The notes under the pieces were generated by a model, which was not told where the DNA came from, did not search any database, and saw only the letters and a list, made by a program, of their open reading frames with translations. The position numbers and the translations under genes are program-made. From NCBI RefSeq assembly GCF_001194135.2, contig NC_068995.1, positions 3,190,884 through 3,238,934 of the forward strand: 48,051 bases of DNA, given 5' to 3'. Shown one piece after another: positions 28,901-31,501 of this stretch. This DNA is from Octopus bimaculoides (lineage: Eukaryota). Position 1 is the stretch's first letter; each line of letters starts with the position of its first letter.

Positions 28901-29461
28901 AATGAAGTTCAATTCAGTGACCATAGACTCTCATGCTATCCAAACGATCTCCGTATTTTCTCATTCATGACAGAAAAAGAAAACAACAAACAAAACAAAC
29001 ATACTTACAGATATCGTATTTCTTTCTTCCCTTTCTTTCGATCTTTCTTTCATTCTTTCCATTCTCTTCAGACTTGTCATCACTTTCTCAAAATTGTCCA
29101 TACATTCCAAAATATTCTTTAGTTTAACAATCTCCATTTGTTTAAAAAAGTTACTATCATTTGTCTTCAGAATCTTATTGTTTTAACTACATGTCTTCTT
29201 GCAGCGGTAAAATATCCAAACTGGTTTCCAACATTTAAAAAATATTGTTTTTTTTTCTCGTCTGATGAAAATAAGATATATCTGTAATTTTTTTTTTACA
29301 GGATTTCGGTATTTTTATTGTCCATTAAAATTCTTTTTTTGCATCCATTAATATATTATTTACTGATATTTTCTATTTGTTTTTATCTTGTTGTTACTAT
29401 TGTTGATGTTGTTGATGATGATGATGGTGGTGGTGGTGGTGGTGGTGGTGGTATTAGATGT

Positions 29462-29716
29462 TTATTTCAGTGGTACGTTTCCATAATTAGCCGGATCACA
29501 CCAAGCGTAGAAATTAGTAGTCGGCCATGATGCTGGCAAAGCTGTAGCCGCTGCTGCACAATTGCGCATGACAGCACGGTGGTTTCCAGCGAACATGGGC
29601 CAGCTAGTACTTGGAAGTGTAGTGTTAGGGCCGTTACATACTGGCATCAGGTTTTCACGGGGAGAGTCCATGTAGTCGGGTACCCGTTCGGCTGAAGGGG
29701 TTGTAACCGGATTTAG
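29462..29716 (-). CDS. Candidate alternative terminal (or cassette) exon of Alx, lacking the OAR motif
   Basis: Acceptor aatatctctatttatcag| in phase 0 opens an 84-codon frame, LNPVTTPSAERVPDYMDSPRENLMPVCNGPNTTLPSTSWPMFAGNHRAVMRNCAAAATALPASWPTTNFYAWCDPANYGNVPLK*. It is a unique, GC-elevated island in an AT-rich intron. Minus-strand AATAAA at 29466-29461 and 29319-29314. Confidence 0.6.
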   Translation of the reverse strand, partial: LNPVTTPSAERVPDYMDSPRENLMPVCNGPNTTLPSTSWPMFAGNHRAVMRNCAAAATALPASWPTTNFYAWCDPANYGNVPLK

Positions 29717-31501
29717 CTGATAAATAGAGATATTGACATCAATGTTGCGATATTCGTAGCCATAAAAATAGATTTAAGGATCGTAACACTTAATACAGAC
29801 ATATAATCCTTAAAAAAACTGAGATTATTTCTCCAACACTGAAGCTTTATACCTAGGTAAACCCTAAGGATTAAAATACCACTACCCCACAATCATTTTC
29901 TATTTTCTAATACCTACAAAACTACAGAAAACGTAGCAAAATCCAAAATAATGTACAACTGTAGTGATGAGTGAAAATCAAACGTTTTGGACATCCGTAC
30001 TTCTTCAAGTAGAAAATTAAATATATAAATTTTAGTCGTTAAGCATTTTCGTTTTTGTTTTTTTTTGTCTTGGTTTCCGTGCTGTTGACTTATTTACATA
30101 TATTTTACTGATCAAAGAAGGACAAATATCCTAAACGTTAGATTTTCTTCGTCGTACACTAACTTTATTCTTATCTTTATCTGTGAACCATCAACTCTTT
30201 CGGTTTTCAAATGTTACCAACCAAACGTACACTTCTCATCTCATTTAATTCCCCCAATTTATTTTACAAGTAGCTAAGGGGCTTTTCAGATTCGGTGTAA
30301 CGGCAATATACATAAATACATACATAATAAATAAATAAATACATATACATACATACATACATACATACGAACATGTATGCATAAGAACATGCATATTTAC
30401 ATACGTACATACATATATACATATAGACACCCATACATATACATACATACTATATACATAGATATACACATATATTTATACGTAGATATANNNNNNNNNN
30501 NNNNNNNNNNNNNNNNNNNNNNNNNNNNNNNNNNNNNNNNNNNNNNNNNNNNNNNNNNNNNNNNNNNNNNNNNNNNNNNNNNNNNNNNNNNNNNNNNNNN
30601 NNNNNNNNNNNNNNNNNNNNNNNNNNNNNNNNNNNNNNNNNNNNNNNNNNNNNNNNNNNNNNNNNNNNNNNNNNNNNNNNNNNNNNNNNNNNNNNNNNNN
30701 NNNNNNNNNNNNNNNNNNNNNNNNNNNNNNNNNNNNNNNNNNNNNNNNNNNNNNNNNNNNNNNNNNNNNNNNNNNNNNNNNNNNNNNNNNNNNNNNNNNN
30801 NNNNNNNNNNNNNNNNNNNNNNNNNNNNNNNNNNNNNNNNNNNNNNNNNNNNNNNNNNNNNNNNNNNNNNNNNNNNNNNNNNNNNNNNNNNNNNNNNNNN
30901 NNNNNNNNNNNNNNNNNNNNNNNNNNNNNNNNNNNNNNNNNNNNNNNNNNNNNNNNNNNNNNNNNNNNNNNNNNNNNNNNNNNNNNNNNNNNNNNNNNNN
31001 NNNNNNNNNNNNNNNNNNNNNNNNNNNNNNNNNNNNNNNNNNNNNNNNNNNNNNNNNNNNNNNNNNNNNNNNNNNNNNNNNNNNNNNNNNNNNNNNNNNN
31101 NNNNNNNNNNNNNNNNNNNNNNNNNNNNNNNNNNNNNNNNNNNNNNNNNNNNNNNNNNNNNNNNNNNNNNNNNNNNNNNNNNNNNNNNNNNNNNNNNNNN
31201 NNNNNNNNNNNNNNNNNNNNNNNNNNNNNNNNNNNNNNNNNNNNTTTATTCTTATCTTTATCTGTGAACCATCAACTCTTTCGGTTTTCAAATGTTACCA
31301 ACCAAACGTACACTTCTCATCTCATTTAATTCCCCCAATTTATTTTACAAGTAGCTAAGGGGCTTTTCAGATTCGGTGTAACGGCAATATACATAAATAC
31401 ATACATAATAAATAAATAAATACATATACATACATACATACATACACACATACATAGTTACATACTAGAGTGTTTCTCATAATATAGTTTAGGAAGTATA
31501 G

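What the first reader, a model, noticed from the sequence alone, without database searches (positions are those of the whole stretch)
29314..29735. Hidden second in-frame terminal exon in the Alx intron: a candidate OAR-less isoform
Seen: a unique, GC-elevated island in an otherwise repeat-filled intron, with a phase-0 acceptor (aatatctctatttatcag|, exon start 29716) matching the phase-0 donor of the helix-3 exon. Splicing gives ...RPDTYPQ|LNPVTTPSAERVPDYMDSPRENLMP...CAAAATALPASW...NVPLK* (84 aa, P/S/T/A-rich). There is an AATAAA overlapping the stop and another about 145 nt downstream. An internal phase-0 CCA|GTATGT after ...ENLMP could also make it a 75-nt cassette exon spliced on to the OAR exon. 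Established: OAR attenuates activity of Alx1/Cart1-type proteins, and vertebrate Prrx1b and SHOXb are OAR-less isoforms made by alternative 3' exons. Inference: this locus could switch between attenuated and de-attenuated Alx by last-exon choice, which I do not recall being described for cephalopods.
Basis: partly seen in the sequence, partly recalled or inferred. Interest (0 to 1): 0.8.

Follow-up and report, generated by a model that had tools for sequence, protein, structure and literature searches.

The report
Conserved OAR-less end exon of cephalopod Alx
The "hidden" exon is a real protein-coding alternative last exon of the octopus Alx homeobox gene; it replaces the usual OAR tail with an 84-residue tail conserved in octopus, argonaut and cuttlefish, and it is already in RefSeq as an unnamed isoform that no paper we could search describes.

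Summary
A phase-0 acceptor sits at 29718-29717. The frame of 84 codons runs 29716-29465 and ends in TAA at 29464-29462. One AATAAA overlaps the stop and a second lies 143 nt downstream.

Open-frame length alone is not special, since the window holds 86 frames of at least 84 codons. Conservation settles the matter:
- The junction 38165->29716 is already RefSeq XP_014786417.1, "uncharacterized protein LOC106880806 isoform X3", from Octopus bimaculoides.
- Argonauta hians has the same exon between the same helix-3 and OAR exons. Amino-acid identity is 88% and dN/dS is about 0.03. The last 47 codons carry 24 synonymous and no nonsynonymous changes.
- Sepia esculenta larval RNA-seq contigs are spliced mRNAs with the same junction and tail.
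- The tail exon is better conserved than the OAR exon (88% against 74%). The OAR exon is also under purifying selection and keeps its acceptor, so both ends are maintained.

Best reading: mutually exclusive alternative last exons, of the Prrx1a/b and SHOXa/b type, dating to before the octopus-cuttlefish split. The tail has no detectable homologue outside cephalopods and is predicted to be mostly disordered.

The 75-nt cassette idea is not supported, because its GT donor is AT in Argonauta. Isoform ratios in octopus and the tail's function remain untested.

The parts
38165..38296 (-). Helix-3 exon of the Alx homeodomain ([44 protein letters not shown]). It has a phase-0 donor, CAG|GTGAGT, with GT at 38164-38163. 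It is shared by both isoforms.
   Evidence: It is 93% identical in amino acids to Argonauta L001 38530-38661. It forms the N-terminal 23 aa of models P0001 and P0003.
29717..29735 (-). Polypyrimidine tract and AG acceptor (aatatctctatttatcAG) of the alternative terminal exon.
   Evidence: The last 10 intron bases, TATTTATCAG, are identical in Argonauta, while the intron further upstream is unalignable at 41% identity.
29462..29716 (-). Alternative terminal coding exon of 84 codons plus TAA (29464-29462). It encodes the OAR-less tail LNPVTTPSAERVPDYMDSPRENLMPVCNGPNTTLPSTSWPMFAGNHRAVMRNCAAAATALPASWPTTNFYAWCDPANYGNVPLK.
   Evidence: It matches RefSeq XP_014786417.1 at 100%. The Argonauta orthologue is L001 44177-44434, with 88% amino-acid identity and dN/dS 0.027; the last 47 codons show 0 nonsynonymous and 24 synonymous changes. 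Sepia esculenta mRNA contigs L004-L014 carry the same tail, 74% identical, with pN/pS 0.19. No Pfam family matches.
29461..29466 (-). AATAAA overlapping the stop codon (AAA TAA A).
   Evidence: The same AAATAAA context is present in Argonauta and Sepia. Sepia contigs run at least 59 nt beyond it, so its use as a poly(A) signal is not shown.
29314..29319 (-). Second AATAAA, 143 nt downstream of the stop. It is a candidate poly(A) signal for the proximal terminal exon.
   Evidence: It is not alignable to Argonauta, and its use is untested.
29640..29641 (-).
   Evidence: It is present in Octopus and Sepia (CCT|GTATGT) but is AT in Argonauta (CCA|ATATGT). It codes Val/Ile-Cys within a conserved motif. 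No model or transcript uses it.
24319..24642 (-). Distal terminal exon encoding the canonical Alx C-terminus with the OAR motif (IQNSVWP...ETERRSSSIASLRLKAHEHSVAMGILSVYSK, TGA at 24321-24319).
   Evidence: Pfam OAR PF03826 matches with E = 5e-8. It is present in models P0003 and P0004. The Argonauta orthologue, L001 48780-49070, is 74% identical with omega 0.085. A Sepia-like orthologue in L002 is 59% identical and has an intact acceptor.
29009..29137 (-). Coding start of the annotated model A0A0L8FVZ5 (P0004, 150 aa). Its ATG is at 29137 and its donor is TCT|GTAAGT at 29008, spliced to the OAR exon. It lies 325 nt downstream of the tail-exon stop.
   Evidence: It is not conserved in Argonauta. 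It may mark read-through of the tail exon followed by a 3'-UTR splice, or an internal start. This is unresolved.

Best explanation
The island is a genuine protein-coding alternative 3'-terminal exon of the cephalopod Alx (aristaless-like, paired-class Q50) homeobox gene.

Mechanism: the phase-0 donor of the helix-3 exon (38165) can take one of two routes.
(i) It can join the proximal acceptor at 29716. The resulting mRNA ends its reading frame after 84 codons and encodes homeodomain plus a cephalopod-specific W/P/A-rich tail, with no OAR motif.
(ii) It can skip that exon and join the distal acceptor at 24642, giving the canonical homeodomain-OAR protein.
The proximal exon carries an in-frame stop, so the two C-termini are mutually exclusive. 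This is an alternative-last-exon arrangement of the Prrx1a/b and SHOXa/b type.

Shown here:
- The exon, its acceptor, frame and stop are real.
- The exon is under strong purifying selection in Octopus, Argonauta and Sepia, so it predates the split between octopodiforms and decapodiforms.
- The junction exists in spliced Sepia mRNA and in a RefSeq octopus model.
- The OAR exon is retained and constrained in all three lineages.

Inferred:
- Exon choice is regulated, through competition between splicing and proximal polyadenylation.
- The tail isoform escapes the modest attenuating effect reported for OAR.
- The tail isoform carries a new interaction or activation module. Its invariant blocks are WPMFAG, RAVMR-CAA and SWP-TNFYAWCDPANYGN-PLK.
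- In cuttlefish larvae the tail form appears to be the predominant mRNA.
For: - The 84-aa peptide hits RefSeq XP_014786417.1 at 100%. That protein is the 23 C-terminal residues of the helix-3 exon plus the tail.
- The same 90% cluster holds Argonauta hians GAB1605055.1, a 323-aa homeodomain protein ending in the tail.
- Argonauta locus L001 has helix-3, tail and OAR exons in the same order. These are the only long collinear blocks shared with the window.
- Between Octopus and Argonauta the tail exon has dN/dS 0.027, and synonymous sites are saturated (pS 0.73). The last 47 codons show 0 nonsynonymous and 24 synonymous changes. Substitutions by codon position are 9/4/45, p = 6e-12.
- The acceptor decamer is 100% conserved while the flanking intron is 41% identical.
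- Sepia esculenta gives a 1487-nt spliced mRNA contig with ...TACCAACAG|CTGAATCC and the tail. A 389-aa variant is on 19 contigs and a 299-aa variant on 4. All end in the tail and none in OAR. The species is identified through SRR23936174 in PMC10442824.
- The OAR exon has omega 0.085 between Octopus and Argonauta and pN/pS 0.285 between Octopus and a Sepia-like genome. The acceptors are intact and the OAR motif is invariant.
- An OAR-form octopus model exists, P0003.
- Precedents: Prrx1a/b (PMC4719312), SHOXa/b (PMC3063249), and the attenuating role of OAR as summarised in PMC5758115.
Against: - No octopus RNA reads could be examined here. Expression of either form in O. bimaculoides rests on gene models.
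- The Argonauta model came from a pipeline that also used O. bimaculoides proteins as homology hints, so the model itself is not independent evidence. The sequence conservation is.
- No OAR-form transcript was seen in any cephalopod, so actual alternation is inferred from constraint on the OAR exon plus model P0003.
- Poly(A) site use after the tail exon is unverified. Sepia contigs run past the AATAAA that overlaps the stop.
- Octopus model P0004 suggests that transcription may continue to a donor at 29008, which splices to the OAR exon.
- The tail's function is unknown. AlphaFold2 gives mean pLDDT 45.
Confidence: 0.85

Rival explanations
1. The tail exon is effectively the constitutive last coding exon of coleoid Alx. 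On this reading the downstream OAR exon is rarely or never translated, being either a relic or 3'-UTR material.
For: All 24 Sepia esculenta contigs end in the tail and none in OAR. The Argonauta model uses the tail. The tail is better conserved than the OAR exon, 88% against 74% between Octopus and Argonauta and 74% against 59% between Octopus and Sepia.
Against: The OAR exon is under purifying selection (omega 0.085; pN/pS about 0.28 against Sepia). It keeps open frames, phase-0 acceptors with polypyrimidine tracts, and an invariant OAR motif in all three lineages. An octopus model joins helix-3 directly to OAR (P0003). An untranslated exon would not keep these features at saturated synonymous divergence.
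Confidence: 0.1
2. The exon is used mainly as a 75-nt in-frame cassette (29716-29642). [quoted passage not shown]
For: A phase-0 GTATGT follows codon 25 in Octopus and Sepia. The PDYMDSPRENLMP motif in the first 25 residues is conserved.
Against: The donor GT is AT in Argonauta. Purifying selection is strongest downstream of that site, with no nonsynonymous change in the last 47 codons, which a cassette would not explain. No model or transcript with the cassette turned up. The GT is simply the start of a Val codon.
Confidence: 0.05
3. Transcripts that include the tail exon read through its poly(A) signals and splice from the donor at 29008 to the OAR exon. The OAR exon then lies in the 3' UTR, which would make the mRNA a possible target of nonsense-mediated decay. 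This would be an additional form alongside true proximal termination.
For: Annotated model P0004 begins at ATG 29137, only 325 nt downstream of the tail stop. It uses a strong donor, TCT|GTAAGT at 29008, to reach the OAR acceptor at 24642. Sepia contigs continue past the AATAAA that overlaps the stop.
Against: The 29137-29009 segment is not conserved in Argonauta. The 5' extent of the P0004 mRNA is unknown. The model may reflect an internal start or a prediction artefact.
Confidence: 0.12
4. The frame is a chance open frame, or a piece of a repeat, that was picked up by gene predictors.
For: The window has 86 open frames of at least 84 codons. A (CCA)n/(CAT)n microsatellite abuts the stop.
Against: dN/dS is 0.027 at saturated dS. 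Substitutions show codon-position periodicity with p = 6e-12. The acceptor and stop are conserved, spliced Sepia mRNAs carry the exon, and it is single-copy.
Confidence: 0.01

Closest known systems
Prrx1a / Prrx1b (vertebrate paired-related homeobox 1 isoforms)
   Same: This is a paired-class homeodomain gene whose isoforms are identical through the homeodomain and differ at the C-terminus by alternative splicing. One isoform carries OAR and the other lacks it (PMC4719312).
   Different: It is a different gene family (Prrx, not Alx) in a different phylum. The cephalopod OAR-less tail is an 84-aa sequence conserved across coleoids with no similarity to the Prrx1b tail. No functional data exist for the cephalopod isoforms.
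SHOXa / SHOXb (human short stature homeobox isoforms using 3' exons 6a or 6b)
   Same: Two alternative 3' terminal exons give an OAR-containing protein and an OAR-less protein from one paired-related homeobox gene (PMC3063249).
   Different: SHOXb is regarded as a weakly expressed modulator. Here the OAR-less exon is the better conserved of the two and is the only form assembled from cuttlefish larval RNA-seq.
Echinoderm Alx1 'Domain 2' exon (Khor and Ettensohn 2017)
   Same: It belongs to the same gene family (Alx). It is a lineage-restricted, highly conserved, alternatively spliced coding exon lying just C-terminal to the homeodomain exon. It has no homologue elsewhere and is proposed to have arisen by exonization of intron sequence (PMC5758115).
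   Different: Domain 2 is an internal cassette that keeps the OAR domain downstream. The cephalopod exon carries a stop codon and replaces OAR. Domain 2 has been shown to be essential for skeletogenic function, whereas the cephalopod tail has no assay.
Gastropod OAR-less Alx-like proteins (Aplysia 'homeobox protein 13', Babylonia LOC143286641, Candidula)
   Same: They have a nearly identical helix-3 exon (…[19 protein letters not shown]…). This is followed by a W-rich tail without OAR that includes a …VYPGWSDPQLLY block, reminiscent of …NFYAWCDPANYG.
   Different: The profile-profile comparison is not significant (hhalign probability 0.2%, E = 0.26). The gastropod tail is split over two exons. 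No OAR exon was found within 10 kb downstream in Aplysia or Babylonia. No W-tail exon was found in the Haliotis or Patella last intron. Homology is therefore not shown.

Membership tests
Alx / aristaless-like paired-class homeobox gene | Paired-like homeodomain with Q50 | tested here: met
   The window encodes helix 3, [12 protein letters not shown], with Q at position 50. The full-length orthologues P0002 and P0019 match Pfam Homeodomain at E = 1e-24.
Alx / aristaless-like paired-class homeobox gene | C-terminal OAR/aristaless motif | tested here: met
   The distal exon at 24642-24319 contains it: Pfam PF03826 matches P0003 at E = 5e-8, 32.9 bits against a cut-off of 20.1. The tail isoform lacks it.
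Alx / aristaless-like paired-class homeobox gene | Orthology to Alx rather than Arx, Rx or other paired-like genes | tested here: inconclusive
   The best named hits of the full-length Argonauta protein are lophotrochozoan and deuterostome ALX1/ALX4-like proteins. No phylogeny was built, and some source names read Rx1-like. The literature calls paired-like orthology ambiguous (PMC8728989).
Alternative-last-exon OAR+/OAR- isoform pair (Prrx1a/b, SHOXa/b type) | Shared homeodomain exons followed by two alternative terminal coding exons, each with its own stop, only one encoding OAR | tested here: met
   Window exons lie at 29716-29462 and 24642-19, both with phase-0 acceptors. Models P0001 and P0003 share the same 23 N-terminal residues. 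Argonauta has the same arrangement.
Alternative-last-exon OAR+/OAR- isoform pair (Prrx1a/b, SHOXa/b type) | Both mRNA forms actually expressed | tested here: inconclusive
   The tail form is seen as spliced mRNA in Sepia esculenta. The OAR form appears only as octopus gene models and is otherwise inferred from purifying selection.
Alternative-last-exon OAR+/OAR- isoform pair (Prrx1a/b, SHOXa/b type) | Proximal exon has its own functional poly(A) site | not testable with these tools
   AATAAA motifs lie at 29466-29461 and 29319-29314. Sepia contigs break in A-rich sequence at least 59 nt after the stop. No 3'-end data are available.
Alternative-last-exon OAR+/OAR- isoform pair (Prrx1a/b, SHOXa/b type) | Isoforms differ in transcriptional activity | not testable with these tools
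   This needs reporter or in vivo assays.
Lineage-specific exonized Alx domain (echinoderm Alx1 Domain 2 type) | Conserved within the lineage, with no homologue outside it | tested here: met
   It is conserved in Octopus, Argonauta and Sepia. No Pfam family matches. A profile search of 1.84 billion representatives returned only tandem-repeat proteins. The comparison with gastropod tails is not significant. Caveat: cephalopod sampling in the databases is thin, and Nautilus was not examined.
Lineage-specific exonized Alx domain (echinoderm Alx1 Domain 2 type) | Internal cassette that keeps the downstream OAR in frame | tested here: not met
   The exon ends in a conserved TAA. The only candidate internal donor is lost in Argonauta.

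The most novel reading that the evidence does not exclude
The tail may be the principal C-terminus of coleoid Alx rather than a minor variant. On this reading it is a cephalopod-specific protein module that arose inside the last intron before octopuses and cuttlefish/squids diverged, and it has since been kept under tighter constraint than the ancestral OAR end. Cephalopods would then have re-equipped a conserved developmental regulator in the way echinoderm Alx1 gained Domain 2, but by swapping the terminal exon. A bolder and less likely extension is that the OAR-less W-rich tails of gastropod Alx-like genes are diverged homologues, which would make the alternative C-terminus ancient in molluscs.
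Probability: 0.45. Interest if true: 0.6.

Novelty: new member of a known kind. Interest (0 to 1): 0.45.

Why it matters
Alx and aristaless-like genes are conserved regulators of appendage, craniofacial and skeletal patterning, and their C-termini tune activity. A tail-swapping isoform that has been conserved since before the octopus-cuttlefish split, and is more constrained than the ancestral OAR end, shows that cephalopods maintain two biochemically distinct versions of one regulator. It supplies exon-specific targets for in situ probes and for CRISPR in Euprymna or Doryteuthis.

There are also two practical points. Public octopus models of this gene are 5'-truncated and labelled "uncharacterized". 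Expression studies whose probes or 3'-biased single-cell reads target the OAR exon could miss the tail isoform.

Tried and rejected
1. Profile search of the tail against 1.84 billion representative proteins. The ten hits are tandem-repeat proteins scoring through many weak stretches. I rejected them as homologues.

2. Pfam scan of the tail at E <= 1. Nothing matched.

3. hhalign of the cephalopod tail profile against the gastropod W-rich tail profile. Probability 0.2%, E = 0.26, so homology is not supported.

4. Search for a dual-exon architecture in gastropods. Haliotis and Patella have only OAR. Aplysia and Babylonia have only W-tail exons within the 10-kb flanks that could be fetched.

5. 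Search for the tail and helix-3 exons within 10 kb upstream of the Sepia-like OAR exon in L002. None were found, so the intron is longer than the stretch I could fetch.

6. AlphaFold2 on the 107-aa isoform with a 4-sequence alignment. Mean pLDDT was 45, with weak helices at residues 69-80 and 89-95 only. This was too poor for a fold search, so none was run.

7. The first word-indexed search with the 84-aa peptide missed the Sepia cluster even though the two share a 13-residue identical block. Absence of hits in that tool is therefore weak evidence.

8. Pfam scan of the five longest other open frames in the window, and a tRNA scan. Nothing credible came up.

9. Literature search for cephalopod Alx or aristaless isoforms. 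No description of this exon was found.
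Full report
**1. What is in the sequence**

The gene lies on the minus strand. The helix-3 exon of a paired-class homeodomain ([44 protein letters not shown]) runs from 38296 to 38165 and ends in CAG|GTGAGT.

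- A polypyrimidine tract and AG sit at 29718-29717.
- The open frame runs from 29716 for 84 codons to TAA at 29464-29462.
- AATAAA overlaps the stop at 29466-29461, and a second copy lies at 29319-29314.
- An internal CCA|GTATGT has its GT at 29641-29640.
- The OAR exon starts at 24642 behind a strong acceptor and ends in TGA at 24321-24319. Pfam recognises its OAR motif at E = 5e-8.

GC content is 0.516 in the island and 0.36 in the rest of the intron. About 14% of the window is assembly gap. This includes gaps at 27690-28337 and 30491-31244 in the two flanking introns, so intron lengths are approximate.

**2. Is it more than chance?**

Not by length. The window contains 86 stop-to-stop open frames of at least 84 codons. 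Comparative data give the answer.

**3. The exon is already a public gene model**

The 84-aa peptide hits one protein cluster at 100% identity. That cluster is RefSeq XP_014786417.1, "uncharacterized protein LOC106880806 isoform X3" from Octopus bimaculoides, 107 aa. Its sequence is [23 protein letters not shown] followed by the tail. This is precisely the predicted junction 38165->29716.

Two further models of the same locus exist.
- A0A0L8FVW0 (130 aa) joins helix-3 directly to the OAR exon.
- A0A0L8FVZ5 (150 aa) starts at an ATG at 29137, uses a GTAAGT donor at 29008, and joins the OAR exon.

All three models are 5'-truncated, which is presumably why the gene is not named Alx. The upstream homeodomain exons are not in the window.

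**4. Argonauta**

The same 90% cluster contains Argonauta hians GAB1605055.1 (323 aa), a complete homeodomain protein that ends in the tail. Its locus (L001) has five exons in order:
- exon 1 at 10001-10225;
- exon 2 at 24385-24753;
- helix-3 at 38530-38661;
- the tail exon at 44177-44434;
- an unannotated but intact OAR exon at 48780-49070, 4.35 kb further on.

A whole-window comparison finds only these three exons as long collinear blocks.

At nucleotide level the tail exon is 78% identical. The ten bases before the acceptor are 100% identical. The intron upstream is 41% identical and the sequence downstream 48%.

Substitutions fall 9/4/45 on codon positions 1/2/3 (p = 6e-12). Nei-Gojobori estimates are pS 0.73 (saturated), pN 0.073 and omega about 0.03. 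The last 47 codons have 24 synonymous and no nonsynonymous differences.

The OAR exon is less conserved, at 74% amino-acid identity with a 12-residue indel. It is still constrained, with omega 0.085 and an invariant OAR motif.

The Argonauta annotation pipeline used RNA-seq, ab initio prediction and homology to O. bimaculoides proteins (PMC12682272). The model is therefore not independent evidence. The sequence constraint is.

**5. Cuttlefish mRNA**

A search with the full-length Argonauta protein gave as top hit a 355-aa protein (E = 2e-101). It is encoded on a 1487-nt Logan contig from run SRR23936168.

The contig is a spliced mRNA with a 406-nt 5' UTR and a complete CDS. It carries the junction ...GACACGTACCAACAG|CTGAATCCAGCA... 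and ends ...TGGTGTGATCCTGCCAACTATGGAAACGCACCGCTGAAATAA.

Related forms in the same cluster are a 389-aa variant with an extra 34-residue upstream segment, found on 19 contigs, and a 299-aa variant with a different 5' end, found on 4 contigs. All end in the tail.

The runs belong to Sepia esculenta larval transcriptomes. SRR23936174 is named in PMC10442824.

Tail identity between Octopus and Sepia is 74%, with pN/pS 0.19. The C-terminal SWP-TNFYAWCDPANYGN-PLK block is almost invariant.

An ENA assembly of the same or a sister species holds exon 1 (L015). On another contig it holds an intact OAR exon with a strong acceptor (L002). That exon is 59% identical to octopus.

No OAR-form transcript cluster appeared in either search. 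This suggests, but does not prove, that the tail form predominates in whole larvae.

**6. Interpretation**

Both terminal exons are kept under purifying selection in both coleoid superorders. The upstream one carries an in-frame stop. The OAR exon can therefore be translated only when the tail exon is skipped.

The simplest mechanism is mutually exclusive alternative last exons, as in Prrx1a/b (PMC4719312) and SHOXa/b (PMC3063249).

OAR has been reported to have a modest attenuating effect in vertebrate Alx1/Cart1-type proteins. It was dispensable in a sea-urchin rescue assay (PMC5758115).

By inference, the tail isoform lacks that module and carries a different, strongly constrained segment. 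The tail has no Pfam match and no credible homologue among 1.84 billion representative proteins. AlphaFold2 predicts it with low confidence (mean pLDDT 45) and only two weak helices. This pattern fits a disordered region carrying short binding motifs.

The closest parallel within the Alx family is the echinoderm Alx1 Domain 2 exon. It is lineage-specific, lies just after the homeodomain, is alternatively spliced and is thought to have been exonized. The difference is that Domain 2 is a cassette that keeps OAR downstream.

**7. What is not supported**

The 75-nt cassette is not supported.
- Its GT donor is AT in Argonauta.
- Constraint is strongest downstream of it.
- No model or transcript uses it.

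The exon is also not hidden, since it is in RefSeq. I found no paper describing it.

**8. Open points**

- Isoform ratios and poly(A) site use in octopus are unknown.
- The meaning of the P0004 model is unresolved. It could be read-through plus a 3'-UTR splice, an internal start, or an artefact.
- It is not known whether Nautilus or Vampyroteuthis have the exon.
- The tail's biochemical role is untested.

A weak resemblance to the OAR-less W-rich tails of some gastropod Alx-like proteins is not statistically supported. Gastropod loci showed only one type of end within the stretches I could fetch.

**9. Verdict**

This is a new, undescribed member of a known kind: an OAR-plus/OAR-minus isoform pair produced by alternative last exons. 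It has a cephalopod-specific, deeply conserved tail. Interest is moderate.

Noticed in passing
window 29137-29009 (minus), donor at 29008: Annotated model A0A0L8FVZ5 (150 aa) starts at an ATG only 325 nt downstream of the tail-exon stop and splices from a strong TCT|GTAAGT donor to the OAR acceptor at 24642. The segment is not conserved in Argonauta. It may be read-through of the tail exon with a 3'-UTR intron, an internal promoter, or a prediction artefact.
   Followed up: partly
window 25712-25670 and 25531-25493 (minus); L001 47815-47858 and 48114-48152: Two single-copy intronic elements of about 40 nt, 84-85% identical between Octopus and Argonauta, lie 0.6-1.0 kb upstream of the OAR exon and are collinear in both species. 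The rest of the intron is unalignable. They are candidate splicing or regulatory elements for use of the distal exon.
   Followed up: partly
window 29456-29382 (minus); L001 about 44450-44650: A (CCA)n/(CAT)n-type microsatellite begins within about 10-25 nt of the tail-exon stop codon in both Octopus and Argonauta. Sepia mRNA has an A-rich tract there instead.
   Followed up: no
L016 (Babylonia areolata), L019 (Aplysia californica), L017 (Patella vulgata), L018 (Haliotis cracherodii): Gastropod Alx-like genes share a near-identical helix-3 exon but differ at the end. Aplysia, Babylonia and Candidula models end in a W-rich OAR-less tail (…MMWMEMYNHYG…VYPGWSDPQLLY…) encoded by two exons, with no OAR exon within 10 kb downstream. 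Haliotis and Patella go straight to an OAR exon, with no W-tail in the intron. It is unresolved whether these are orthologues with replaced ends or paralogues.
   Followed up: partly
L004 compared with L005-L014 (Sepia esculenta mRNA contigs): Cuttlefish Alx also has upstream alternative splicing. A 34-residue segment (GDYQPSSFQRESRIYFQEKPHPSVINSHLFAAFDL) is present in the 389-aa form and absent from the 355-aa form. A third, 299-aa form has a different 5' end.
   Followed up: no
L001 48780-49070 compared with window 24642-24319: The Argonauta OAR exon lacks 12 residues (FNNNIPIRVMDP) that are present in Octopus just before the OAR motif. The exon is not included in the Argonauta gene model, although it is intact.
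   Followed up: partly
window 40789-40883, 27400-27511, 26062-26172, 9154-9251, 4473-4587, 2754-2858; L001 31669-31783 and 12025-12084: An interspersed repeat of about 100 nt occurs at least six times in the window, in both orientations. It is 74-85% identical to copies in the Argonauta locus, so the repeat family is shared by the two octopods. ARAGORN finds no tRNA-like gene in the window.
   Followed up: no
window, whole: About 14% of the window (6824 bases) is N gap in 19 runs. The 5' exons of the gene, which correspond to exons 1 and 2 of the Argonauta model, are not in the window. All three public O. bimaculoides protein models of this locus start at an internal Met of the helix-3 exon or later.
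   Followed up: yes
tool behaviour: The word-indexed protein search with the 84-aa tail returned a single candidate. It missed the Sepia cluster, which shares a 13-residue identical block with the query. Negative results from that search should not be read as absence.
   Followed up: yes
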